Source of the DNA: Octopus sinensis
Taxonomy: Eukaryota
Length of the DNA stretch: 15,930 bases
Assembly: GCF_006345805.1 (NCBI RefSeq)
Contig: NW_021825368.1
Coordinates: forward strand, 1 to 15,930
Direction: 5' to 3'
Part shown: one piece after another, positions 2,399 through 15,930 of the stretch
How positions within the stretch are numbered: the stretch's first letter is position 1
Layout: each line of letters begins with the position of its first letter
Translations under genes and position numbers: made by a program
Notes under the pieces: generated by a model
Told to the model about the DNA's origin: nothing
Databases searched by the model: none
Seen by the model: the letters and a program-made list of their open reading frames with translations, nothing else

Positions 2399-2765
2399 AT
2401 GGAAAAGTGAATCACCTGGATTGTGCTGTTCAAATGGAAAGATGAAGTTGAAACTATTACCTGAACCAAGGGAACCTTTGAAGGGACTGATGATTGGTAC
2501 AACTATTGGATCAAGATATTTTCTTCAAAATATACAGAAGTACAACAATGCATTCCAAATGACATCATTTGGTGCAAATGTCATCTATGAAGGTGGCTTT
2601 ATGCCCACTTTCAAGATCCGAAGAGAAGTGTACCATAGAATAGAAGAAGAACCAAAATATCTACAATTGTATTTCATCGGTGATAGGAAAACCCAAGCAC
2701 AGACAAGTCATGAAAGGAATAAAGAAAGAAGGCATGGAATCATGTTATAACCACAAGATATGTTA
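2397..2765 (+). pseudogene. Helitron RepHel N-terminal fragment 1
   Basis: KWKSESPGLCCSNGKMKLKLLPEPREPLKGL...RYFLQNIQKYNNAFQMTSFGANVIYEGGFMPTFKIRREVYHRI..EEPKYLQLYFIGD matches the conserved Helitron pre-Rep block (CCxxGKVxL...FLxNIRxYNxAFQMTSFG...FKIQGQVYHRIG...PKFLQIYFxGD). Frameshifted towards its end. Confidence 0.9.
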
Positions 2766-3186
2766 CAGGAGTGGCTGTGTGGTATGTAGCTTGCTAACCA
2801 ACCACATGGTTCCGGGTTCAGTCCCACTGCGTGGCATCTTGGGCAAGTGTCTTCTGCTATAGCCCCAGGCCGACCAATGCCTTGTGAGTGGATTTGGTAG
2901 ACGGAAACTGAAAGAAGCCTGTCGTATATATGTATATATATATATAAGTGTGTGTGTGTATATGTTTGTGTGTCTGTGTTTGTCCCCCTAGCATTGCTTG
3001 ACAAACGATGCTGGTGTGTTTACGTCCCCGTCACTTAGCGGTTCGGCAAAAGAGACCGATAGAATAAGTACTGGGCTTACAGAAAGAATAAGTCCCGGGG
3101 TCGATTTGCTCGATTAAAGGCGGTGCTCCAGCATGGCCGCAGTCAAATGACTGAAACAAGTAAAAGAGTAAAAGAGTAAAGAGTAA
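2766..3186 (+). mobile_element. tRNA-derived composite SINE (family A; CORE-like; Octopus OR-type by recollection), copy A1
   Basis: Head gtggctgtgtggta...ggttccgggttcagtccc (A/B-box-like), then cttgggcaagtgtctt (CORE-like start), internal TA/TG microsatellite, right arm ...gcggtgctccagcatggccgcagtcaaatgactgaaac and (gtaaaaga)n tail. No clear TSD, but the flanks rejoin as Helitron codons atg tta ca|t aca aaa aac agc tat. Confidence 0.9.
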
Positions 3187-3339
3187 TACAAAAAACAGCT
3201 ATATTAGGAGTTTGAAATATGCCATAGGAAATGAGCTTGCAGAACTCGAAGTAGGGATAAATGCTGACAAGAGACCATCAGGAGAGCATTCACGCCGATA
3301 TAATGCACCTGAATGTAATGAAATAGCTAGTGTAATATC
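3187..3339 (+). pseudogene. Helitron RepHel fragment 2
   Basis: NSYIRSLKYAIGNELAELEVGINADKRPSGEHSRRYNAPECNEIASVI matches the Helitron ADKRPxGEHxRRxNAPxxNEVA motif. Confidence 0.88.
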
Positions 3340-3722
3340 GTGGAGGCGCAATGGCCCAGTGGTTAGGGCAGCGGACTCGCGGTCATAGGATCGCGGTTTC
3401 GATTCCCAGACCGGGCGTTGTGAGTGTTTATTGAGCGAAAACACCTAAAGCTCCACGAGGCTCCGGCAGGGGATGGTGGTGATCCCTGCTGTACTCTTTC
3501 ACCACAACTTTCTCTCACTCTTACTTCCTGTTTCTATTGTACCTGTATTTCAAAGGGCCGGCCTTGTCACTCTCTGTCACGCTGAATATCCCCGAGAACT
3601 ACGTTAAGGGTACACGTGTCTGTGGAGTGCTCAGCCACTTACACGTTAATTTCACGAGCAGGCTGTTCCGTTGATTCGGATCAACCGGAACCCTCGTCGT
3701 CGTAACCGACGGAGTGCTTCCC
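3340..3722 (+). mobile_element. tRNA-derived SINE family B, copy B1, with 11-bp TSD
   Basis: Head gtggaggcgcaatggcccagtggttaggg...gtttcgattccc (A box TGGCCCAGTGG, B-box-like GTTTCGATTCC). TSD agtgtaatatc at 3329-3339 and 3723-3733; removal restores ...A S V I S G E K... Confidence 0.95.
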
Positions 3723-3733
3723 AGTGTAATATC

Positions 3734-4025
3734 AGGAGAAAAGCATGGTAAGTATGACATAATCCTTCATGGGAGAGATAATCAATTACAGAGAATGAAT
3801 GAAACACATCGATGTTATGATGCTCTCCAATAATCTTTAATTTATGTGAATGGGGAAGATAGATACTATTTTAAAACCCCTCAAAATGATGGAAATGATA
3901 ATATGAGAAAGACTTACTCCCATCATTTTACGGTTCATCAAGATAATTTCAATTCACTCCGCCGAATGTGAAGTTTGTTCCATCAATTTGTATGCAAAAG
4001 TCGAGGCGGAAAGATTAGCATTCAT
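3734..4025 (+). pseudogene. Helitron RepHel fragment 3
   Basis: GEKHGKYDIILHGRDNQLQRMNETHRCYDALQ*SLIYVNGEDRYYF...NFNSLRRM*SLFHQFV/(frameshift)YAKVEAERLAF matches ETHRSYDALQYPL..GEDG and LFHQFxVDMYAKIESERL; two stops and a frameshift. Confidence 0.88.
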
Positions 4026-4423
4026 GAATGGAACGGAAGCACTCTGTCGGTTACGACGACGAGGGTTCCGGTTGATCCGAATCAACGGAACAGCCTGCTC
4101 GTGAAATTAACGTGTAAGTGGCTGAGCACTCCACAGACACGTGTACCCTTAACGTAGTTCTCGGGGCTATTCAGCGTGACACAGAGAGTGACAAGGCCGG
4201 CCCTTTGAAATACAGGTACAAGAGAAACAGGAAGTAAGAGTGAGAGAGAGTTGTGGCGAAAGAGTACAGCAGGGATCACCACCACCCCTGCCGTAGCCTC
4301 GTGGAGCTTTTTTAGGTGTTTTCGCTCAATAAACACTCGCAACGCCCGGTCTGGGAATCGAAACCGCGATCCTATGACCGCCGCGAGTCCGCTGCCCTAA
4401 CCACTGGGCCATTGCGCCTCCAC
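4026..4423 (-). mobile_element. tRNA-derived SINE family B, copy B2 (inverted relative to B1), with 12-bp TSD
   Basis: Reverse complement of B1. TSD attagcattcat at 4014-4025 and 4424-4435; removal restores E R L A F I R S H Q K. Confidence 0.95.
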
Positions 4424-4435
4424 ATTAGCATTCAT

Positions 4436-4690
4436 AAGATCCCACCAGAAAGAATGAAGACCTGAGTCATACATTCATTTACGCGATGGCATCAGTAACG
4501 AAGTTGCTGCTGAAGACATTGGGACGTTGTGCATCCTTCCATCTGGCTTTACTGCTAGCCCCAGATATATGCATGAAAGAACGCATGACGTATGCTAGGA
4601 ACTTTGGTAAATCAAACCTATTCGTAACTTTCACATGTAATCCAAGACGGAAAGAGATTCAAAATGAATTGCTTCCAGGTCAAACACAAT
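4436..4690 (+). pseudogene. Helitron Rep fragment 4, including rolling-circle motif 1
   Basis: RSHQKE*RPESYIHLRDG...ILPSGFTASPRYMHERTHD/(frameshift)MTYARNFGKSNLFVTFTCNPRRKEIQNELLPGQ matches ILPSxFxGSPRYMxExxQDAMTYVRxxGxPDLFITFTCNPxWxEI. Similarity stops before the HUH motif. Confidence 0.92.
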
Positions 4691-4923
4691 GCTGGAAGTT
4701 CAAAACATCATTTCATTTCTACTCCACTGGGAAAAACTCATAATGTTGTATGTAAAGAAGTTTTATCATAACTTGCTTTTATGTGTTTTCTATTTCAAGA
4801 ATGTCGTTGCTGTTGACCTCACTGAATTTGCTATGTCAGTAATGTTAGAATCACCAATCATGACAATTATTAAAAGAAGAACTCATATATCAAATTTTTG
4901 AATGAAATCTCATTATTACATTT

Positions 4924-5046: not shown

Positions 5047-5282
5047 TAGTTATGTTTATATAGTAGATAGTACTTTGGCAATGCGTAGAAACTATTTAAA
5101 ATTCATACGTCGCACAACTATTCCTAAGATTATGAACAAAATAAACGCTGCTGTTTTGACAAGTAACAAATCATAAAGCTAATGAAAAGATCCATATTTC
5201 ATTTGTGAATAATATGCCGTGGAGAGCATAGAATGCTTTTATGTATGGTGAGAAAATGTTTTTTTCTGGGCAATGAAAGAAA

Positions 5283-5470
5283 TGTGATAATTACAACGAC
5301 GTTGTTGAAAAATTGCTTAAGAATTTTTATCGTTCAAGAAAAGATATGAGAATTACAACCACGTAGTTGAAAAATTGCATGCGAATTTTTATCGTTTATG
5401 TGGCACCATAAGAAAACGTATGAGAATTACAAAGATGCAGTTGAAACATTGCATAAGAACTTTTATCGTC
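5283..5470. repeat. Three diverged copies of a 52-bp unit (5283-5334, 5345-5396, 5419-5470)
   Basis: Consensus about tatgagaattacaa.gacgtagttgaaaaattgcataagaatttttatcgtt; start-to-start spacing 62 and 74 bp. Confidence 0.85.
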
Positions 5471-5576: not shown

Positions 5577-5924
5577 CAAGGGGAAGGTCAAAAATCTTCC
5601 ACACTTTTGCCAAAACTTTGTTTATATTGACCGCACTGCCTTCAGCGCTCGCATGCTAAAAGATGGTACCGTTGTGGTCACATTACCGACGTTTGGCCTT
5701 CCTCGCTCCAGTTTTGTTTCTTGTGTTACATATTAAACATGGCCACTCCGCTGGCAATGTGCACCAAGGTTGAACAAAGATCAGTGGTCCGAATTCGTTA
5801 GGGTGTCAGGGGCTGAAATTCATCGCAGGCTTTTTGTTACATTGACAGCTCTCAAACGCTTAACAGAGTGTATGAGTGGATCGAAAAGTTAAAAAATGGC
5901 TGGACAAGCATGAAACTCGATGAG
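5577..5924 (+). mobile_element. Tc1/mariner-family DNA transposon 5' relic (putative left TIR + transposase N-terminal HTH), frameshifted and truncated
   Basis: ATG at 5739: MATPLAMCTKVEQRSVVR, then (other frames) VSGAEIHRRL and NRVYEWIEKLKNGWTSM, matching mariner CTxxEQRSVIRFL..EGxxGAEIHRRL...VYEWIExFKNGRTS. TA|caaggggaaggtcaaaaa at 5575 resembles a mariner TIR start (lower confidence). Confidence 0.8.
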
Positions 5925-5934
5925 ATAGTAGGAC

Positions 5935-6050
5935 ATCAATCTTCCGGAGTCGATAAAACAAGTACCAGTTGAGTGCTGGGGGTCGATGTAATCGATTTAA
6001 CCTCCCCCCCCGAAACTGCTGGTCTTCTGCCATTTTTAAAAATCAATATT
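5935..6050 (+). mobile_element. Headless family C SINE fragment
   Basis: cttccggagtcgataaaacaagtaccagttgagtgctgggggtcgatgtaatcgattt is the reverse complement of the family C body. Confidence 0.8.
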
Positions 6051-6922: not shown

Positions 6923-7523
<601 letters not shown>

Positions 7524-7532
7524 GGGTAATTT

Positions 7533-8991
7533 AGTGTCGGGTTTGCAGTATAAACAAACCATTGCAAGCAACAACTATCATAACTTCCGCAAGATGAAAA
7601 TGATCACGTTATGACTCTGAAAGTAGATCTGATGGAGAGGCACTCGACGTATTTAGTAAGTTGCCGTATTCGAGAAATACGCGACATATCTAGTTACTCA
7701 GAAGGTAATTGAAATATTTGCTAAGCTGCCTTACTTATGGATATGTCAAAATACGATTTTAACGTTCGATAATATTCCGTCATCTTAAGATTAACTCGTC
7801 CTGGCAACGCGTTACTGTTTGTGGGTGGAGGCGCAATGGCCCAGTGGTTAGGGCAGCGAACTCGCGGTCGGAGGATCGTGGTTTCGATTTCCAGACCGGG
7901 CATTGTGAGTGTTTATTGAGCGAAAACACCTAAAGCCCCACGAGGCTCCGGCAGGGGGTGGTGGTGAACCCTGCTGTACTCTTTCGCCACAACTTTCTCT
8001 CAATCTTTCTTCCTGTTTCTCTTGTACCTGTATTTCAAAGGGCCAGCCTTGCCACTCTCTGTGTCACGCTGAATATCCCCGAGAACTACGTTAAGGGTAC
8101 ACGTGTCTGTGGAGTGCTCAGCCACTTGCACGTTAATATCACGAGCAAGCTGTTCCGTTGATCGTATCAGCTGGGACCCTCATCGTCGAAACCGACGGAG
8201 TGCTCCTAATAAATAACTGTTTGTGGACTTTAATGTCAGGAAGGCTCGTTTTCGGAAAGTTGGTTGTGATGTAATGAACAAGCACAGTATAGAGATAATA
8301 GTTAGCAGTGGGTTGCATCTGGTGGCTTTTCTTTTGGTCATGAATCTGGCCTCTCTGTTACAAACATATTGGTCCAGCAATCACATAATTATAAATAACT
8401 TGGTACACCCTCGGTACACCAGGGCTCACCTGTAATCACACAATCACCGTGAAAGACATAAACGATGTTATTTTCATTTGCTCATTTACAGCCGCTTGTA
8501 TTCTCCAGCGTTTCATGTAAACAACGACATTAAAATACCAAAGTCTCTCGATGTGTAAATGTCAAGTCATCCAAGGTTGAGGAGAGAAAACGTGAGCTCA
8601 CAAATTAGATGGGAATCTGTCAAACGTAAATACAATAGAAAATGTTAAAGAATCGCAGAGGTGCCTCAGAGCAACCGTATATTCTGCTTCCTTTAAAGTA
8701 ATAGGATTGCCCCGAGGCAATCATCGACATTGGTTCGATTAGTATAACCTTAAACTTAGATCCGTCTCTGGATAGTATGCATATTACACACAAACAACAT
8801 TGGATATCGGTGAAAAGTGTCAAGCTGAAAATAAATCTTTTCTTGAGCTAAAACGATCGGTACAAATGTTTTTGGGAAGTATTAAAGAAACACGATGGAC
8901 ACAAAGAGCAACTGAGATTGAATCTTCTCCAGATAGGAAACATATTACATCGGTTTATGACGGTTTCAAAACAATACAGGAACCAACATAG
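7533..8991 (+). pseudogene. Decayed RTE-clade (BovB-like) non-LTR retrotransposon ORF: APE endonuclease domain + linker; RT not present
   Basis: VGFAV*TN...LPQDENDHVMTLKVDL (cf. GVGFAIK...LPxGINDRLMTLRLPL); LLFV|DFNVR across the SINE B3 TSD (GDFN motif); HPR..HL..DINDV; ATVYSASFKVIGLPRGNHRHWFD at 8671-8739 (cf. xVYxxAxExLG...RKHQDWFDEN); KRSVQMFLGSIKETRWTQRATEIESSPDRKHITSVYDGFKTIQEPT (cf. VQxKLRxMQDxWWxxKAxEIQxxADxxDMKxFYxALKxVYGP). Many stops and frameshifts. Confidence 0.82.
7825..8215 (+). mobile_element. Family B SINE, copy B3, with 11-bp TSD, inserted in the LINE endonuclease motif
   Basis: Same head and body as B1; TSD actgtttgtgg at 7814-7824 and 8216-8226; tail taataaata. Confidence 0.95.
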
Positions 8992-9176
8992 AACCTTGCC
9001 TAATATCATTGGTACTCTGTCTTGGTTCCTGTATTTGCTATTATGTCTTCCAGTTATGCCACATTGCTCTTTTAAAAACTTTTGAAAAGCGAGTCAGATA
9101 TGAGTTTTGTTTTAGTGGAGAAGATTTCTAATCACGTAAGATGCAAAACAAAGATACTAAATCGGGCAAATATATA

Positions 9177-9406
9177 TTTCTTTACTGCCCACAAAGGGCT
9201 AAACATAGAGGGGACAAACAAGGACAGACAAAGGGATTAAGTCGATTACATCGACCCCAGTGCGTAACTGGTACTTTATTTATCGATCCCGAAAGGATGA
9301 AAAAGGCAAAGTCGACCTCGGCGGAATTTGAACTCAGAACGTAACGGCGGACGAAATACGGCTACGCATTTCGCCCGGCGCGCTAACGATTCTGCCAGCT
9401 CACCGC
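9177..9406 (-). mobile_element. Full-length family C SINE with TSD of up to 13 bp
   Basis: gcaaatatatatt at 9166-9178 and 9405-9417, overlapping the element ends by ~2 nt. Minus-strand head gcggtgagctggcagaatcgttagc...gttctgagttcaaattccgcc; tail gtgggcagtaaagaaa. Confidence 0.92.
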
Positions 9407-10204
9407 AAATATATATTCTTGATGTGCTGCTTGTTGACGGTGCAGCATTTGTGGCATATCTGATGAAGAAAACTACTGAATGCTTTTCGTGTGTTAGTGA
9501 AGCCATTGATCTCAAGCCTAAAGAAAACTGAAGTAGACAAACCCAAGACAAAGAAAAGGAGTAAAACACAGCTAACCTATCCATATTCTCCTCTAACAAA
9601 TCCCATTAAATAGAATAGCCAAGATTTAATACAAATTTAGAATCGTAAATAGATAATCCAATGTAATCGACTCTTTGGTTACTTGCAGCGTCATTTCTGC
9701 TAAAATCTGAAAAAGAAAATTGATGTAGTTCGTATTAACATTGTTTATAGATCTGAGATCCAAAATCCTTTTAAGACCTATATCGAACGTTTGGATACTT
9801 TCCATAATTGTAGCATCTGTTGGTTCACCTACAAGGACAAAATCCAGTGTCAATATTTTCCAAGGAAATTGTTTAGACACATTACGTGTTGGGCTTCAGT
9901 TTAGTTGGCTTAGCCATAGCATTTGAGTGAGCGAACGCCTACCCAAAAGTCTCTTACACAAGTTATTTCTATAAATGTGTGCGGACCGATAAGAGACATG
10001 CTTTAAAGTACAAATATGATGTGAAATCGAATTTATCTTTTAGGTTGGAAAGAGAGTCCTGTCGCATTTTAAGATGAGGGGAAAAAAAAACAAATATTTC
10101 TTGGGGCTTAACTGATATATTTAACCAAATAAATATTTTCCCCCATTATTAATGATATAATCCCAACTATTAGGCAAATTGTTGATCCCTCAAACGTAAA
10201 ATTC

Positions 10205-11259
10205 TTCAAGTATCCTAATAGATTTCATCGAACCCCAGAGCTCAACTGGTACTTATTTTATCGATCCCTAAAAGATAAAGGGTAAAGTTGACCTCGACCA
10301 AATTTGAACTCAGAACATAAAGACGGACGAAATACTTATTTCTTTACTACCCACACGGGGCTAAACACAGAGGGGACAAATAAGGACGGACAAACGGATT
10401 AAGTCTATTACATCGACCCCAGTGCGCAACTGGTATTTATTTAATAGGACCCCGAAAGGATGAAAAGCAAAGTCGATCTCGGCGGAATTTGAACTCAGAA
10501 CGTAACTGCAGACGAAATACCGTTAAGCATTTTGGCCGGCGTACTAACGATTCTTATTTCTTTATTGCCCACAAGGGGCTAAACATAGAGAGGACAAACA
10601 AGCACAGACAAAGGATTTAAGTCGATTACATCGACCCCAGTGCGTAACTGGTACTTAATTTATCGACCCCGAAAGGATGAAAGGTAAAGTCGACCTCGGC
10701 GGAATTTGAACTCAGAACGTAAAGACGGACGAAATATCGCTAAGCATTTCGCCCCGCGCGCTAACGATTCTGCCAACTCGCCGCCTTTCGAGGGAGGGAG
10801 ATAATGAACGAAAGAGAGTAATAATTCTCTTATTATTCTTATTTTGGCACAAAGGAAGCAATTTTGAGGAGTGGGGAAAAGTCGATTACATTGACCCCAA
10901 TAGCCAACCGTTACTTATTTTATCAACTCCAAAAGGATGAAGAGCAAAGTCAACCTCGATGGCATATGAACTGAGAACGTAAAGCTCGGAAGGAAATACC
11001 TATTTCTTTACTACCCACAAGGGGCTAAACACAGAGGGGACAAACTAGGACAGACATAGGTATTAAGTCGATTACATCGACTCCAGTGCATAACTGGTAC
11101 TTAATTTATCGACCCCGAAAGGATGAAAGGCAAAGTCGACCTCAGCGGAATTTGAACTTACAACGTAACGACAGACGAAATACGGCTACGCATTTCGCCC
11201 AGCGTGCTAACGTTTCTGCCAGCTCGCCGCAGTAACGATAATGCTAGCTCGGCGCCTTA
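10205..11259 (-). mobile_element. Head-to-tail stack of five family C SINE copies (about 10205-10335, 10336-10553, 10554-10787, 10830-10999, 11000-11230, plus orphan head 11231-11259)
   Basis: The gtcgattacatcgacccc...tttgaactcagaacgtaa body recurs in each copy. Junctions gaaatac|ttatttcttt, ctaacgattc|ttatttcttt and gaaatac|ctatttcttt. Confidence 0.9.
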
Positions 11260-11482
11260 GAGTTTTGCTGTAATAATAATTATTGGAAAATAACTGACAG
11301 AAACAATATAAGCTGTTGGATTATTATTGCTATAATAAATGAATTTAGACGCAAAGCGTTAATCATTTACGTGCTTAGCGTTTTAAAGTACTCTATATAA
11401 CAGTAAAGGAGAAATAATAAAATATAGCAAATTATGAAGCACCGAATTTCTACTTAGGTATTCGCTGTATCAGTTAACAGAT

Positions 11483-12815
11483 AATTTCAGGTGTGACATT
11501 ATTGAGAAGAAAAAGGTAATTAGCGGATAATTCAGGTAAGATGCTATCTAAAACAGAAAATTAGTAGAGAATTTCAGGTGAGGTAATCCATGAAGTAGAA
11601 AGTTAGCTAACATTTTTCGGTGGGATAATACATGAAACAAAGATTTAACAAAATTTCAGGTGAGTGAGATATTACCTGCAATAGATAATTTGATGGTCTT
11701 TCAGGTAAAATATGATCTAGAACTGAGATTTGGTGGACACTTTTCTGGTAAGGTTTTTATCTTGAACAGAATAATTCAGTAGAATTTCAAGTGAGAACGG
11801 AAAGTAGACGATATGAGGCAAAATATTACCTGGAACTAAACATTACCAAATTCCAGGTGAGATATTGACTGGAATAGAATGTTAAAATACTATTTCAGGT
11901 AGAATATAACCTGAGAATAATATTCATCAAACTCTTTGTGGAAACAAAATAATATCCAAATTTCAGGCCCGTGAGAGTAAGTTATCAGACGATTTTTAAT
12001 GATAAACTGCGATATATTGTGATATATTACGCAGAAGAGAATGTTGGCAAACAATTCCAGTTGAAATATTGCCTGAAGTAGAGAAATTAATGGATAATTT
12101 CAAGTGAGATACAACCCAGGAGAGTATGGTAGCAGAAAAATTTCAGGTTATATATTACTTGAAATAGAAAAGTTGAACACGATTTCAGGTGAGATATTTA
12201 CAGAGACAGATATTCACCAGACTAACTCAAAGAGTCATCAGACAATTACAGGTGATATATTCTGATATATTATGTTATCGAATAGTTCCAGGTGATGTAA
12301 TACAGGGTGCAAAGAAATTAGTAGGGTATTGCAGGTTGGATTTACCTTTAACTGTAAATGAGCAGACTAATTATTTCAGGTCAGACAATACCTGAGATAA
12401 GCTATTTCGAGGAGGTGGGGCACAATAGTAGAATCTGAGTATCTGGTACAGGAATATCTGTAGAATATTTTCAGGTGTGATATTACCTGAAATAAATAAG
12501 AAAAAGGTTAATTTCAGGTTATACAACGATAGAAATTAATTAAACTATGTTCAGGTGAGATATCACCTGCTAAAGAAACTGGGAACAGGGAAATTGGTTG
12601 GGTATTTCAGGTGAAATGTACCTGGAACTGTAAGGGAACAGGTATGTTGTAATATGAAAAATAAAGTCATCAAATTATTTCAGGTAAGATAACGACTGGA
12701 ATAGGTATTCAGCAAGCTACTTCAGGTGAGATATAGCGTTGGGCTTATGTCAGGTGAGTTACCAGAAAATTCAACCGAATATTTTCAGGTGTGATATGAC
12801 TTGAAATAAGAAAAG
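11483..12815 (+). repeat. Degenerate 42-43-bp tandem array with palindromic core TTTCAGGT-GAGATATT-ACCTGGAA (block 1)
   Basis: 22 intact CAGGT cores counted by eye (11488, 11533, 11575, 11657, 11702, 11854, 11896, 12144, 12186, 12249, 12289, 12332, 12377, 12472, 12515, 12552, 12608, 12639, 12681, 12723, 12751, 12786) plus in-register variants (11618, 11745, 11788, 11964, 12058, 12101). The commonest spacings are 42 and 43. Rough consensus AATTTCAGGTGAGATATTACCTGGAATAGAAAATTAGCAAAC. Confidence 0.88.
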
Positions 12816-13052
12816 TTACGCGTCAGTAGAAATATAGAACTTTATTGAATTAAAGACAGAAGCTGCACTATTCATCCGGTTGAATATTCCTTTATTGACG
12901 TATTCACTTAAAAAAAAAACCACAATATACTTCTGAGCGAGGTTAAAAGGGTCTTTTCCTGGATGAGCAATCCAGTTTCTGGCTTTTCTATGATATACAT
13001 AAGTTATGTATGTCATATTATCATGAAGATTTTAATTAAGAGCCGATTACAT

Positions 13053-13820
13053 TTTTTTGTCTTTTACCTTTTATGTCATTCGGTTACTAAACTTTCGGCC
13101 ATGCTTGGGCACCACCTAGAATAATTTTTAACCGAATCAACTCTCGTACTTATTCTATCGGTCTCTTTTGCCGAACGGCTACACATCCCAAAACCGTAGG
13201 ACAAACAAACATTCACACAATCATATATATATATACTCTTTTACTTGTTTCAGTCATTTGACTGCGGCCATGCTGGAGCACCGTCTTTAGTCGAGCAAAT
13301 CGACCCCGGGACTTATTCTTTGTAAGCCCAGTACTTATTCTATCGGTCTTTTTTGCCGAACCGCTAAGTGACGGGGATGTAAACACACCAGCATCGGTTG
13401 TCAATCAATGCTAGGGGGACAAACACAGACACACAAACATATACACACACACTTATATATATATACATATATACGACAGGCTTCTTTCAGTTTCCGTCTA
13501 CCAAATCCTCTCACAAGGCATTGGTCGGCCCGGGGCTATAGCAGAAGACACTTGCCCAAGATGCCACGCAGTGGGACTGAACCCGGAACCATGTGGTTGG
13601 TTAGCAAGCTACTTACCACACAGCCACTCCTATATATATATATATATATTATATACGATGGACTTCCTTCAGTTTCCGTCTATCAAATCCACTCACAACG
13701 CTTTCGTCAGCCTGAGGCTATAATAAAAGACACTTGCCTAACGTGCCCTGCAGTGGGACTGAACCCAGAACCATGTGGTTGGGAGGCAAAATTGTTACCA
13801 CACACCCACGCCCACGCCTG
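13053..13820 (-). mobile_element. Older, diverged family A SINE (A4), split by the younger A3 inserted in its internal (TA)n
   Basis: Diverged right arm ~13053-13225 (cggccatgcttgggcacc...gtacttattctatcggtctcttttgccgaac) and diverged left arm ~13652-13820 (ttcagtttccgtctatcaaatccactcacaa...cagtgggactgaacccagaaccatgtgg) flank A3. Confidence 0.8.
13235..13631 (-). mobile_element. Family A SINE, copy A3 (young, full length)
   Basis: Reverse complement of A1/A2 from the tail (actcttttacttgtttcagtc) to the head (ccacacagccactcct); (TA)n on both sides. Confidence 0.93.
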
Positions 13821-13944
13821 CATCTATACAGCCACGGCGGCGCCTCTTTCTATATTTGTCCTGAAATATATAAGTTTAGTACGTCATATAGATAAACATT
13901 TTAATCTAGGGCTTATTTAGCTGCATAATTCGCATTTTATTGAA

Positions 13945-14400
13945 CAAATTTCAGGTAAGGTAATTACCTGAAAATGAAAATCAGTAATCTAAAAAATTCC
14001 AGGTATTAACCCAGAAATATTTTCATTGAAATATATAAGACAAGACGTTACCTGGAACAGAGCGTTAGCAAAATATGTCAGGTGTGATGTTATCTGGAAC
14101 AGAAAGATATTTCTTGGAAGAGAAATTGAGCAAACTAATTCCAGATGAAATATTTTACCTGACACAAGAAATTTAGCGGACAATTTCTAGTGAGATCTTT
14201 CAAAGACCGAGAAAAAATCAACGGAGTATTTCAAATTAGATGTTCACTGGAATGGAAAACTAGAAATGTATCTCAGGTGAAATATTACAGTTACTAAATT
14301 TCTCAGGTGAGATTGTAAATGAAGCAGAAAATTACTAAACAATTCAGGATGAAATAATACTAGGAATTGAATACATGCAGGATACTTCAAGTAACTGAAA
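13945..14400 (+). repeat. Palindromic 42-43-bp array, block 2
   Basis: CAGGT cores at 13952, 14000, 14079, 14274, 14304 plus variants (ccagatgaaatattttacctg, ttctagtgagat, ttcaggatgaaat). Perfect 10-bp-arm palindrome tttcaggtaa-ggtaa-ttacctgaaa at 13949-13973. Confidence 0.82.
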
Positions 14401-14689
14401 ACGCGTGGCCTAGTGGTTAGGGTATTGCACTCATCATCGCTAGATGGTGGGTTCTGTTCCCGGACAGGGAGGTGCTTTGGGTTCTTGAGCAAACAGCAAG
14501 TTGCTCCGGTCCATTTAGCTGTAAATGGATCACCCTGCGACGGACTAGTGTTCCGACCAGGAGAAATGTTGGCCTACTCGCCTAGTCAGCATGGTGGCAT
14601 CATTCGAAAGCTAAAGCGATGCAAAGGGCATTGTGACCAGCGATGTATAACAATGTCCGTTAGTCTGGCCGATCACGTGATCATGTGAT
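14401..14689 (+). mobile_element. tRNA-derived SINE family D (single diverged copy, CORE-like middle)
   Basis: Head gcgtggcctagtggttaggg (A box TGGCCTAGTGG)...ggttctgttccc (B-box-like); then gttcttgagcaa...ttgctccggtccatttagctgtaaatgg; ends gatcacgtgatcatgtga. No second copy in the window; no TSD found. Confidence 0.65.
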
Positions 14690-14870
14690 TTCAAATAAGA
14701 TGTTAATTAAGAAATTTATTCATCACACTATTTCAGGCGAGATATTACTTGACACAAGACATTTACCAGTTAATTCCCGAGAAGTAATAAGAAGCTAATT
14801 TATTAATTATCCATAATATACTCATTAAAAAAATCGTCACCAGTTAACTTTTTCCAGTTTTGTTATTCAT

Positions 14871-15048
14871 AGGCGCAAGTACGGGTTTCAGTCCTACTGC
14901 GCGCGGCACCAAGGGCAAGTACTTATTCTATCGGTCTCTTATAGCAAAGCGTTTCATTACGGGGACGTAAACACACCAACACCGGTTGCCGAGCGGTAGT
15001 AGGGGTCAAACAAAGACACACACACACACACACACACACATACACACA

Positions 15049-15100
<52 letters not shown>

Positions 15101-15149
15101 CGACGAGCTTCTTTCAGCTAAATCCACTCACAAGGCTTTCATCGACCCG
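14871..15149 (-). mobile_element. Rearranged family A SINE (A5): plus-strand head fragment 14871-14920 fused to a minus-strand body with internal (CA)n
   Basis: aggcgc...gggtttcagtcctactgcgcgcggcaccaagggcaagt (sense head) runs directly into acttattctatcggtctc (antisense right arm); (CA)n ~15016-15088. Confidence 0.75.
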
Positions 15150-15492
15150 GCGCTACAGTAGAAGACACTTGCAGTGGGACTGAACTCAGAACCATGTGGT
15201 TGGTACGCAAGCTTCTTACCACACGCGCTACAGTAGAAGACATCTGCCTAAGGTGCCACGCAGTGGGACTGAACTCAGAACCATGTGGTTGGTACGCAAG
15301 CTTCTTACCACACGCGCTACAGTAGAAGACACTTGCCTAAGGTGCCACGCAGTGGGACTGAACTCAGAACCATGTGGTTGGTACGCAGGGCTTCTTACCA
15401 CACGCGCTACAGTAGAAGACATTTGCCTAAGGTGCCACGCAGTGGGACTGAACTCAGAACCATGTGGTTGGTACGCAAGCTTCTTACCACAC
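15150..15492 (-). repeat. Four tandem copies of an 89-bp unit made of the family A SINE tRNA head + CORE-like start
   Basis: Units start 15150 (75 bp, 14-bp deletion ctaaggtgccacgc), 15225 (89), 15314 (90), 15404 (89); nearly identical. Confidence 0.95.
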
Positions 15493-15534
15493 AGCATGAC
15501 TGGATATCTTTGGCTATTTGATTTTTGATTTTTC

Positions 15535-15575
15535 CAGTTTCAGCTAATGAGCTGTGGCCATGCTGGGGAACCGCT
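15535..15575 (-). mobile_element. Short family A-like 3' arm fragment
   Basis: gtttcagctaatgagctgtggccatgctggggaaccgc resembles gtttcagtcatttgactgcggccatgctggagcaccgc. Confidence 0.6.
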
Positions 15576-15783
15576 ATTTTTTTTTTTTTGAATAATTTTT
15601 CTAATTTTTGTAATGATTTTTCTTTTTAGGCGTGTCTGCTCTTTTGTGCACCGACATTTTTTTTTATAATTTAATCTCCAGTGTACTACGAAATCACAAA
15701 GCTACAGAACCACTGCTGTGCTATATCTTTCTTATAAAGTCCCCTGTATACCGTAGTATATAGACAGACATTCAACAAATCAT

Positions 15784-15890
15784 TATTTCAGGTATTATCT
15801 CACTCAAAGTAGGAAGTGAATGGATTAATTCAGATGAGATATTATCTGCAACAGGAAATTAAGAGACCATTTGAGATGTTTTACTATGTC
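15784..15890 (+). repeat. Palindromic 42-43-bp array, block 3 (may continue beyond the window)
   Basis: tatttcaggtattatctc (15789) and taattcagatgagatattatctgcaacaggaaatt (15831), 42 bp apart. An isolated unit tatttcaggcgagatattacttgacac also lies at 14729-14755. Confidence 0.7.
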
Positions 15891-15930
15891 CTGTATATTA
15901 TTGATTTCTAATACAAAAAAATGTCCTCTG

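What the first reader, a model, noticed from the sequence alone, without database searches (positions are those of the whole stretch)
11483..15890. Long, old 42-43-bp tandem array with a conserved dyad core (8-bp inverted arms, 8-bp asymmetric spacer) and pairing-preserving variation
Seen: 28 intact CAGGT cores plus in-register variants, in blocks spread over ~4.4 kb. Units are heavily diverged, yet TTTCAGGT persists and the mirror arm ACCTG(G/A)AA often does. As + strand RNA the consensus folds into a 10-bp stem (UUUCAGGUGA/UUACCUGGAA, two G-U pairs, GAUA loop). Variants tend to keep pairing: U-G becomes C-G at 11852 and U-A at 12469-12492; G-U becomes G-C at 12552-12569; 13949-13973 has perfect 10-bp arms. 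Inference: the core may be under constraint, as (i) an array of dimeric-protein sites spaced ~4 helical turns, (ii) recombinase-like sites with arm-8N-arm geometry, or (iii) a multi-hairpin lncRNA. CAGGTG/CAGGTA is an E-box-type site for Snail/ZEB factors, and ZEB binds bipartite CACCT sites. I do not recognise this as a described cephalopod satellite.
Basis: partly seen in the sequence, partly recalled or inferred. Interest (0 to 1): 0.75.

Follow-up and report, generated by a model that had tools for sequence, protein, structure and literature searches.

The report
Old decayed 42-bp tandem repeat array
This is a real but very old and decayed tandem repeat in transposon-rich non-coding DNA: its hairpin-like symmetry is an inherited leftover, not something kept by selection, and only one short motif (ATTTCAGGT) has decayed more slowly than the rest.

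Summary
The array is real. About 48 head-to-tail units, modal length 42 bp, all on the + strand, lie in four blocks (11446-12812, 13946-14376, 14689-14760, 15783-15880). Three younger transposon or SINE insertions separate the blocks.

An alignment that was not anchored on the core converges from four unrelated seeds on AATTTCAGGTGAGATATTACCTGAAATAGAATGTTAGCAGAT.

- CAGGT columns match the consensus at 0.93, against 0.73±0.04 in neutral-decay simulations (0 of 120 reach it).
- Without any alignment, core 5-mers survive in 22-28 units, ACCTG in 10, and tail 5-mers in 4 or fewer.

The dyad reading fails:
- The right arm is no better conserved than background.
- The left arm is better conserved than the right (0.83 vs 0.74, p=0.0009).
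- There is no covariation: 70.7% of cells pair, against 71.1% after shuffling.

The palindrome is therefore ancestral and is decaying one arm at a time. This argues against a hairpin RNA, a dimeric protein site, or a recombinase site.

What protects the left motif is unresolved. It fits a CAGGTR zinc-finger site and also a juxtaposed 3'/5' splice-site motif. No cephalopod genome, RNA or chromatin data were reachable. Interest is modest.

The parts
11446..12812 (+). Block A of the array: about 34 units of the 42-bp repeat, the longest uninterrupted stretch
   Evidence: Wraparound DP alignment. nhmmer hits run from 11446 to 12808, all on +. Lag-42 autocorrelation. The flank 12809-12870 is no more similar to the unit than shuffles are.
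12813..13945 (.). Interruption 1: non-array DNA with SINE-like copies, including a 182-bp x1.8 repeat at 13454-13782. Not part of the repeat; serves as an age marker.
   Evidence: No unit hits. Segments 13234-13634 are 93-98% complementary to copies at 2764-3170 (I1, I4, I15), so they are far younger than the array units, which are about 62% identical to each other.
13946..14376 (+). Block B: about 11 units, including the best palindrome (13949-13973, perfect 10-bp arms)
   Evidence: nhmmer hits 13948-14373. DP units. Lag 42 = 0.368.
14377..14688 (.). Interruption 2: a 312-bp insert whose head looks tRNA-like by eye (SINE-like). Not part of the repeat.
   Evidence: No unit hits. ARAGORN and Rfam are negative, so the tRNA-like reading is only by eye.
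14689..14760 (+). Block C: two units
   Evidence: nhmmer two-unit model hit 14689-14756, E=2e-5. DP units.
14761..15782 (.). Interruption 3: SINE-like cluster with (AC)n and an 89-bp x3.6 tandem repeat at 97% identity. Not part of the repeat.
   Evidence: TRF, the repeat finder D8 and D14, no unit hits.
15783..15880 (+). Block D: two to three units. The window ends 50 bp later, so the array may continue beyond it.
   Evidence: nhmmer 15785-15866, E=2.2e-8. DP units. 15876-15930 is not unit-like.
12467..12496 (+). Example of a well-kept unit head: ATTTTCAGGTGTGATATTACCTGAAATAAA (core, loop, right arm)
   Evidence: Sequence. The surrounding stretch 12327-12626 folds better than shuffles (z = -3.4), whereas 11483-11780 does not (z = +0.7).

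Best explanation
This is the relic of an ancient minisatellite. A 42-bp unit that happened to carry an 11-bp-stem palindrome (TTTCAGGTGA-GATA-TTACCTGAAA) was amplified head-to-tail by slippage or unequal exchange into at least 48 copies (inferred). Homogenisation then stopped. The copies diverged independently, in a star-like way, to about 62% pairwise identity and picked up many small indels. Three much younger SINE or transposon insertions later split the array.

The dyad symmetry is inherited from the founder unit and is not maintained. Each arm decays on its own, the right arm at the background rate.

The one feature that does not look neutral is that the left motif ATTTCAGGT(R) has decayed about half as fast as the rest. 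I read this as a single, strand-asymmetric recognition motif. It could have been favoured while the array was still turning over, or it could be weakly protected now. The more likely reader is a DNA-binding protein of the CAGGTR-recognising zinc-finger type (Snail/ZEB class). A present function for the array as a whole is not shown, and I consider it unlikely.
For: Shown:
- Same-strand 42-bp periodicity in four blocks.
- Convergence on one consensus from four unrelated seeds.
- No linkage between variable columns: smallest p = 0.0038 over 251 tests. No higher-order period. Both point to star-like divergence.
- Units are about 0.62 identical to each other, while the inserted SINE copies are 82-98% identical to copies elsewhere in the window.
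- No covariation.
- Right-arm conservation is ordinary: 28 of 120 simulations as high.
- Consensus match in the left and right arms correlates no better with each other (r=0.15) than either does with the tail (0.23, 0.24).
- The core is over-conserved against a star null (0/120) and against mixed tree/star nulls matched to the observed score and identity spread (0/100).
- In blocks B-D, which were not used to train the profile, the best window again falls on (A)TTTCAGG.
- Compared base by base, the core is better kept for every base: C 37/38 vs 76/123, p=4e-6; all bases together p=3e-10.
- Alignment-free 5-mer survival is 22-28, then 9-10, then 4 or fewer.
- CAGGT 28 vs ACCTG 10 on the + strand.

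Inferred: how the array was amplified, and what reads the motif.
Against: - Purifying selection on each of about 48 individually dispensable sites would be very weak, so a neutral cause of the gradient is not excluded. Candidates are turnover that favours units with an intact core, indel-prone A-rich tails, or ancient tail variants (there are hints of a TCATCAAAC tail type).
- A fully coalescent null reproduces such a conserved window in 41 of 100 runs. That null misfits the data (identity sd 0.167 vs 0.095; score 1178 vs 755).
- The finding was picked because of its core, so some selection bias applies.
- No expression, chromatin or cross-species data could be reached, so 'no present function' is a judgement, not a result.
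Confidence: 0.6

Rival explanations
1. The array is the internal tandem-repeat module of a transposable element, for example the central repeats of a non-autonomous Helentron/Helitron as in oysters. The core is the element's protein-binding motif, and many related arrays exist genome-wide. This concerns origin and can coexist with the relic reading.
For: - In another mollusc, satellite-like arrays are carried and spread by non-autonomous Helentrons (PMC7492417).
- The window does hold a Helitron_like_N fragment on the + strand near 4500-4700 (E=9.7e-9) and is a transposon graveyard.
- A conserved box plus variable remainder is what selection at the level of element copies would give.
Against: - The Helitron fragment lies about 6.7 kb upstream, separated by unrelated SINE clusters.
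- No terminal structure or inverted repeat bounds the array in the window.
- At least 48 units over 2 kb is long for a central-repeat module.
- No second copy in the window, and none in any reachable collection, though those collections hold no cephalopod DNA.
Confidence: 0.2
2. The array is a working cluster of single CAGGTR sites for a Snail/ZEB/Scratch-type zinc-finger protein (or CAGGTG for E-proteins). It would act as a silencer, an enhancer or a protein sink, and the sites are kept by selection today.
For: - The most invariant columns are C, A and T of CAGGT. C is 37/38 and is never the expected C-to-T transition.
- CAGGTR is intact in 24 units on + against 4 in the other 11.4 kb.
- The asymmetry between the arms fits one site per unit.
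Against: - The strict E-box CAGGTG survives in only 16 of about 48 units.
- The conserved span also includes the upstream ATTT, which a CAGGTR core does not explain.
- The second CACCT-type site needed for two-handed ZEB binding is not kept.
- Spacing is not phased.
- No binding or accessibility data. The motif assignment is from memory of published motifs.
Confidence: 0.1
3. The array works at the RNA level as a string of juxtaposed splice acceptor and donor motifs (TTTCAG|GTRAG, like a recursive-splicing ratchet point) in a + strand transcript. It would recruit U1/U2AF, for example to tether or trap the RNA or to direct stepwise splicing.
For: - The kept motif matches both splice consensus sequences over about 11 positions. 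The upstream TTT is explained by this reading.
- CAGGTRAG is present in 11 units on + and 0 on -.
- Ratchet points are defined as juxtaposed acceptor-donor pairs that need a downstream donor about 50 nt away (PMC8605326). The next unit would supply that donor at 42 nt.
Against: - Conservation does not follow the splice-site pattern. Position -3 C is the best kept column, +5 G is kept in only 0.67-0.71, and +1 G is no better than its neighbours.
- No conserved branch point: the tail is the least conserved part.
- The pyrimidine tract is only TTT.
- Cryptic splice sites in introns are normally selected against.
- Transcription of the + strand is unknown.
Confidence: 0.06
4. One reading: a multi-hairpin structured RNA, an array of sites for a dimeric protein, or recombinase-type arm-8N-arm sites, with both arms under constraint.
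For: The consensus hairpin is stable (-13.4 kcal/mol, z=-4.7). One 300-nt stretch folds better than shuffles (z=-3.4). Individual units with perfect or compensated arms exist.
Against: - No excess pairing and no excess double changes.
- The right arm decays at the background rate.
- The arms are unequal.
- Another 298-nt stretch folds no better than shuffles (z=+0.7).
- No Rfam match.
- No recombinase gene in the window.
- Only 16 of 43 units keep 8 or more of the 10 pairs, as expected from inherited symmetry.
Confidence: 0.04
5. The conserved core is an artefact of anchoring, of alignment feedback, or of chance in a tree-like array history. Decay is in fact uniform.
For: - A pure coalescent null gives windows as conserved in 41 of 100 runs.
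- A high-information core attracts the aligner.
- The finding was selected for this very property.
Against: - Alignment-free k-mer counts show the same gradient.
- Seeds that do not start at the core converge on the same profile.
- The coalescent null misfits the identity spread and the score.
- No column linkage.
- Held-out blocks B-D repeat the pattern.
- Base-matched tests are significant.
Confidence: 0.08

Closest known systems
Minisatellites or satellite DNAs with a conserved box inside an otherwise variable monomer (e.g. the 17-bp CENP-B box in alpha satellite; dyad symmetries in many satellites)
   Same: Head-to-tail array. One short motif per unit is much better kept than the rest. There is a short inverted repeat in the monomer. 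The review PMC8122249 lists dyad symmetries and inverted repeats as common satellite features and CENP-B as a box-binding protein.
   Different: Only about 2 kb of units at this locus, very decayed (about 62% identity), no higher-order structure, embedded in transposon-rich DNA rather than shown to be centromeric. No binding protein is known. Genome-wide abundance is unknown.
Satellite-like central repeats of non-autonomous Helentrons (Cg_HINE) in the Pacific oyster
   Same: A mollusc; short satellite-like arrays scattered among genes and transposons (PMC7492417). A Helitron-type fragment is present in the same window.
   Different: No shared flanking modules or termini were seen around this array. 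The Helitron fragment is 6.7 kb away. No second copy is available for comparison.
Drosophila intronic ratchet points (recursive splice sites)
   Same: Juxtaposed acceptor and donor (CAG|GTRAG) with a further donor some tens of nt downstream (PMC8605326).
   Different: Ratchet points are single, deeply conserved sites in long introns with long pyrimidine tracts. Here there are about 48 tandem copies, a weak tract, no branch-point conservation, and no evidence of transcription.
Arrays of short conserved sites separated by free spacers (Su(Hw) sites in the gypsy insulator; miR-7 sites in CDR1as; Xist A-repeat). All recalled from memory.
   Same: Architecture: a conserved core of 8-25 nt plus a variable spacer, many copies, one orientation.
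   Different: In those cases binding or function is demonstrated and the cores are conserved across species. Neither could be tested here.

Membership tests
Tandem repeat / minisatellite array | Head-to-tail copies in one orientation with a constant period | tested here: met
   Lag-42 autocorrelation peak. All nhmmer hits on the + strand. About 48 units, modal length 42-43 bp.
Tandem repeat / minisatellite array | Copies descend from one founder unit (a common consensus is recoverable) | tested here: met
   Four unrelated seeds converge on the same 42-mer. The repeat finder family D7.
Satellite DNA family (genome-wide) | Many arrays or high copy number across the genome | not testable with these tools
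   No cephalopod genome is reachable. Metagenome and prokaryote scans gave only chance hits.
Structured RNA repeat (hairpin lncRNA) | Base pairs kept through compensatory change (covariation) | tested here: not met
   70.7% of cells paired vs 71.1% shuffled; 9 vs 9.1 double changes. 289 vs 286±4 on the DP alignment.
Structured RNA repeat (hairpin lncRNA) | Folding energy beyond that of composition-matched shuffles | tested here: inconclusive
   z = -3.4 for 12327-12626 but +0.7 for 11483-11780. The consensus gives z = -4.7.
Structured RNA repeat (hairpin lncRNA) | Transcribed from the + strand | not testable with these tools
   No RNA data. No Rfam family.
Dimeric-protein or recombinase site (arm - 8 nt - arm) | Both inverted arms conserved alike | tested here: not met
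   Left arm 0.83 vs right arm 0.74, p=0.0009. Right arm ordinary in 28 of 120 simulations. CAGGT 28 vs ACCTG 10.
Dimeric-protein or recombinase site (arm - 8 nt - arm) | A cognate recombinase or transposase gene nearby | tested here: not met
   The only Pfam match in the window is a Helitron_like_N fragment 6.7 kb upstream. No ORF of 90 aa or more lies in the array.
E-box / Snail-ZEB site cluster | Intact CAGGTG (E-box) or CAGGTR core in most units | tested here: inconclusive
   CAGGTG in 16 and CAGGTR in 24 of about 48 units. C, A and T of the core are the best-kept columns.
E-box / Snail-ZEB site cluster | Bipartite CACCT pair for two-handed ZEB binding | tested here: not met
   The second site (TACCTG) is intact in 8 units and is not over-conserved.
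E-box / Snail-ZEB site cluster | Occupancy by the factor in vivo | not testable with these tools
   No ChIP or ATAC data.
Recursive splice site (ratchet point) | Juxtaposed AG|GT with donor-like downstream bases | tested here: met
   TTTCAG|GTRAG consensus. CAGGTRAG in 11 units on + and 0 on -. Definition from PMC8605326.
Recursive splice site (ratchet point) | Pyrimidine tract and branch point upstream; conservation pattern of splice sites | tested here: not met
   Only TTT lies upstream. The tail, where a branch point would sit, is the least conserved part. +5 G is kept in 0.67-0.71 while -3 C is kept in 0.97.
Recursive splice site (ratchet point) | Lies in a long intron of a gene transcribed in the same direction | not testable with these tools
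   No gene model or RNA data. No coding exon was recognised in the window.
Helentron/HINE central tandem repeats | Array bounded by element-specific flanks and termini shared among copies | tested here: inconclusive
   No bounding inverted repeats were seen. The 3' side is cut by the window end and no other copy exists for comparison.

The most novel reading that the evidence does not exclude
The left motif is under present-day constraint. The array would then be a working multi-site platform: either about 25-30 live CAGGTR sites that load or soak up a Snail/ZEB-type repressor, or a + strand RNA carrying dozens of acceptor-donor (U1/U2AF) motifs that tethers or traps its transcript. The decayed palindrome would be a fossil of how the unit arose. 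A tandem array of ratchet-point-like motifs has, to my knowledge, not been described.
Probability: 0.12. Interest if true: 0.7.

Novelty: new member of a known kind. Interest (0 to 1): 0.3.

Why it matters
If the relic reading is right, the finding is ordinary. It adds one old minisatellite to a repeat-rich genome. It also gives a worked example of how inherited dyad symmetry can pass for 'pairing-preserving variation'.

The part worth keeping is the threefold gradient of decay within a 42-bp unit, with one arm of a palindrome outliving its mirror image. Simple neutral decay does not predict this. If orthologous arrays show the same protection since speciation, the locus would be a compact natural experiment. 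It would show what protects a short motif in an array: protein binding, splice-factor binding, or biased turnover.

Tried and rejected
- TRF at minimum score 30 does not see the array. I wrote a wraparound profile aligner instead.
- tRNA and Rfam searches, at gathering threshold and at E up to 1, gave nothing relevant.
- ORF listing shows nothing coding in the array.
- A metagenome scan for the dyad unit gave 32 single hits, about the chance number, and none sits in an array.
- A prokaryote-genome scan for three phased cores gave only unrelated coding repeats. No unit-profile hit at E up to 1e-4.
- Exact-protein look-ups of two window ORFs, tried to fetch longer contigs, found nothing on record.
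- Seven literature searches found no description of this repeat.
- My first covariation count (323 vs 306) looked positive. It was an artefact of gaps being moved by the shuffle, and it vanished once only cells with letters on both sides were shuffled.
- Subfamily or higher-order structure as the cause of uneven conservation: no significant column linkage, no lag-84 or lag-126 signal.
- A possible extra unit at 12823-12865, seen by eye, is no better than shuffles.
- A mariner-like HTH near 5700-6000, recalled from memory, has no Pfam support.
- Internal 14- or 21-bp sub-periodicity of the unit: checked by eye, not convincing.

Full report
**Context.** The window is AT-rich eukaryotic DNA full of microsatellites and interspersed repeats.
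- It has no tRNA gene, no Rfam family at gathering score and no convincing coding ORF.
- The only protein-domain match is a degraded Helitron_like_N fragment on the + strand near 4500-4700 (E=9.7e-9).
- The array therefore sits in a transposon graveyard, either intergenic or intronic.

**Is the array real?** Yes.
- CAGGT occurs 28 times in 11483-15890 and 5 times in the remaining 11.5 kb. Composition predicts about one in the array sequence.
- Lag 42 is the highest autocorrelation in block A (0.341 vs 0.284 expected, about 4.7 sd) and in block B (0.368). Two control stretches show nothing.
- TRF misses the array because the copies are below its identity range. The repeat finder recovers a 14-copy family at 60-73% identity (D7).
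- I wrote a wraparound profile aligner (cyclic 42-column profile, not anchored on any motif). From four unrelated 42-mers in different phases it converges on the same consensus, AATTTCAGGTGAGATATTACCTGAAATAGAATGTTAGCAGAT.
- An HMM built from the aligned units finds units only on the + strand and only in four blocks: 11446-12808, 13948-14373, 14689-14756 and 15785-15878. The flanks of these blocks are no more unit-like than shuffles.
- In total there are about 48 units. The modal length is 42-43 bp and the range is 28-50.

**Age and integrity.**
- Units are about 62% identical to one another even after a generous alignment.
- The three gaps between blocks are filled with SINE-like sequences that are 82-98% identical to copies elsewhere in the window (I1, I4, I15, D8, D14). 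The array is therefore several-fold older than the insertions that broke it.
- There is no higher-order period.
- There is no significant linkage between variable columns: the smallest p is 0.0038 among 251 tests.
- The units thus look like independent, star-like descendants of one founder.

**Is the core really better conserved, or only an anchor?** It is really better conserved.

*Aligned evidence.* With the unanchored alignment, the CAGGT columns match the consensus at 0.93 and TTTCAGGT at 0.88, against a column mean of 0.75.

| Null model | Fit to data | Runs reaching the observed best 5-column window |
|---|---|---|
| Uniform-rate star (same pipeline, indels, AT-biased replacement) | core columns 0.73±0.04 | 0 of 120 |
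| Mixed tree/star | matched to observed score (about 760) and identity spread | 0 of 100 |
| Pure coalescent | misfits: identity sd 0.167 vs 0.095, score 1178 vs 755 | 41 of 100 |

*Further support.*
- Blocks B-D were not used to train the profile. Their best window again falls on (A)TTTCAGG.
- Compared base by base, the core beats non-core columns for every base: C 37/38 vs 76/123, p=4e-6; G p=3e-4; T p=1.5e-5; overall p=3e-10. AT-biased mutation would predict the opposite for the G and C columns.
- Without any alignment, consensus 5-mers survive in 22-28 units across ATTTCAGGT, in 11-21 across GTGAGATATT, in 9-10 across TTACCTG, and in 4 or fewer across most of the tail.

**Is the dyad maintained?** No.
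- The right arm ACCTG is conserved at 0.76, which 28 of 120 neutral simulations reach.
- The left arm is better kept than the right: 0.83 vs 0.74, p=0.0009.
- CAGGT outnumbers ACCTG 28 to 10 on the same strand.
- For the 10-pair stem over 36 units, 70.7% of cells form a standard pair, against 71.1% when the 3' letters are shuffled (350 of 500 shuffles at least as high). Cells changed on both sides number 9 against 9.1.
- On my own alignment the count is 289 of 391 against 286±4.
- An earlier apparent excess was an artefact of gaps being redistributed by the shuffle.
- Consensus match in the two arms correlates no better with each other (r=0.15) than either does with the tail (0.23, 0.24).
- The consensus does fold well (-13.4 kcal/mol, z=-4.7). 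Real stretches are mixed: z=-3.4 for 12327-12626 and z=+0.7 for 11483-11780. This is what decaying inherited palindromes would give.

**What it most likely is.**
- It is an old minisatellite whose founder unit contained a palindrome. Homogenisation stopped long ago and the array is now a relic interrupted by younger insertions.
- The dyad is a fossil.
- This removes the basis for a hairpin RNA, a dimeric site or a recombinase-type arm-spacer-arm site.
- It also removes the two-handed ZEB idea, which needs both CACCT-type sites.

**What remains unexplained.** One arm and its 5' flank, ATTTCAGGT(R), have decayed roughly half as fast as everything else. Two readings fit the letters.
- *A single CAGGTR site per unit for a Snail/ZEB/Scratch-type zinc-finger protein.*
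  - For: the best-kept columns are C, A and T of the core, and C is never replaced by the expected T.
  - Against: the strict E-box CAGGTG survives in only 16 units, and the ATTT flank is not explained.
- *A juxtaposed splice acceptor and donor, TTTCAG|GTRAG, the sequence definition of a recursive-splicing ratchet point.* The next unit would supply the downstream donor that such sites need (PMC8605326).
  - For: this reading explains the TTT flank.
  - Against: the conservation profile is not splice-like (+5 G at 0.67-0.71, -3 C at 0.97). There is no conserved branch point, because the tail is the least conserved part. The pyrimidine tract is minimal.

A neutral cause also cannot be excluded.
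- Candidates are array turnover that favoured units with an intact core, or ancient tail variants (hints of a TCATCAAAC tail type).
- Selection on each of about 48 redundant sites would be very weak.

**Comparison with what is known.**
- The architecture matches the common picture of satellite or minisatellite monomers with a conserved box and short dyad symmetries (review PMC8122249).
- In molluscs, satellite-like arrays are known to be carried by non-autonomous Helentrons (PMC7492417). A transposon origin is possible but unsupported here, because no termini or second copies are available.
- I found no description of this repeat in the searchable literature.
- I found no related array in the metagenome or prokaryote collections, which do not hold cephalopod DNA. 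I could not consult Dfam, Repbase or any cephalopod assembly, so 'not described' is unproven.

**Verdict.**
The array, its period, its age and the conserved core hold. The persistent mirror arm and the pairing-preserving variation do not.
The core may be constrained, but not as a dyad.
- I classify it as a new member of a known kind (a decayed minisatellite with a conserved box) and rate interest at about 0.3.
- The decisive test is a per-column substitution count between orthologous units in sister species, together with stranded RNA and chromatin data at the locus.

Noticed in passing
window 2421-4750 (+ strand): Degraded Helitron Rep-like reading frame in pieces. One piece near 4500-4700 matches Pfam Helitron_like_N (E=9.7e-9). 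The upstream pieces look similar by eye but gave no Pfam hit. The frame is interrupted by a SINE-like insert at about 2764-3170, which is 93-98% complementary to 13234-13634.
   Followed up: partly
window 15171-15492: An 89-bp unit repeated 3.6 times at 97% identity, made from an internal SINE segment that is also present at 13519-13803. This is a young tandem duplication, in sharp contrast with the old 42-bp array around it.
   Followed up: no
window 9168-11230: At least five head-to-tail copies or fragments of another SINE-like family (62-89% identical to the reference copy, including a 217-bp x2 tandem at 10335-10771), packed directly upstream of the array. More diverged copies lie at 1792-2408.
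   Followed up: no
window 3570-3721 / 4035-4186 and 4081-4288 / 7955-8162; also 3340-3577 vs 7825-8062: Inverted repeat pairs at 98% and 95% complementarity and a 94% direct pair. These are copies of a further repeat family nested in and around the Helitron fragment, possibly a young foldback or TIR element.
   Followed up: no
window 5274-5469: Three tandem 60-nt repeats (starts 62 and 74 nt apart; the flanking copies 80-83% identical to the middle one) that translate to a similar peptide each time (..NYNDVVEKLLKNFYRS..). They look coding-derived, but there is no Pfam match.
   Followed up: partly
window 14377-14688: A 312-bp insert splitting the array. Its first ~70 nt look like a tRNA-derived SINE head by eye (box A/B-like GGCCTAGTGG ... 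GGTTCTGTTCC). ARAGORN and Rfam do not call it.
   Followed up: partly
window 7088-7299, 686-886, 15016-15088: Very long simple repeats: (TA)106, (TCTA)52 and (AC)36. Several sit at the ends of SINE-like copies.
   Followed up: no
window 11446-12812: About a quarter of the units carry a variant tail (TAT-TCATCAAAC instead of AATGTTAGCAGAC). Linkage between the variant columns is only nominal (p = 0.02-0.06). It may mark an ancient second unit type.
   Followed up: partly
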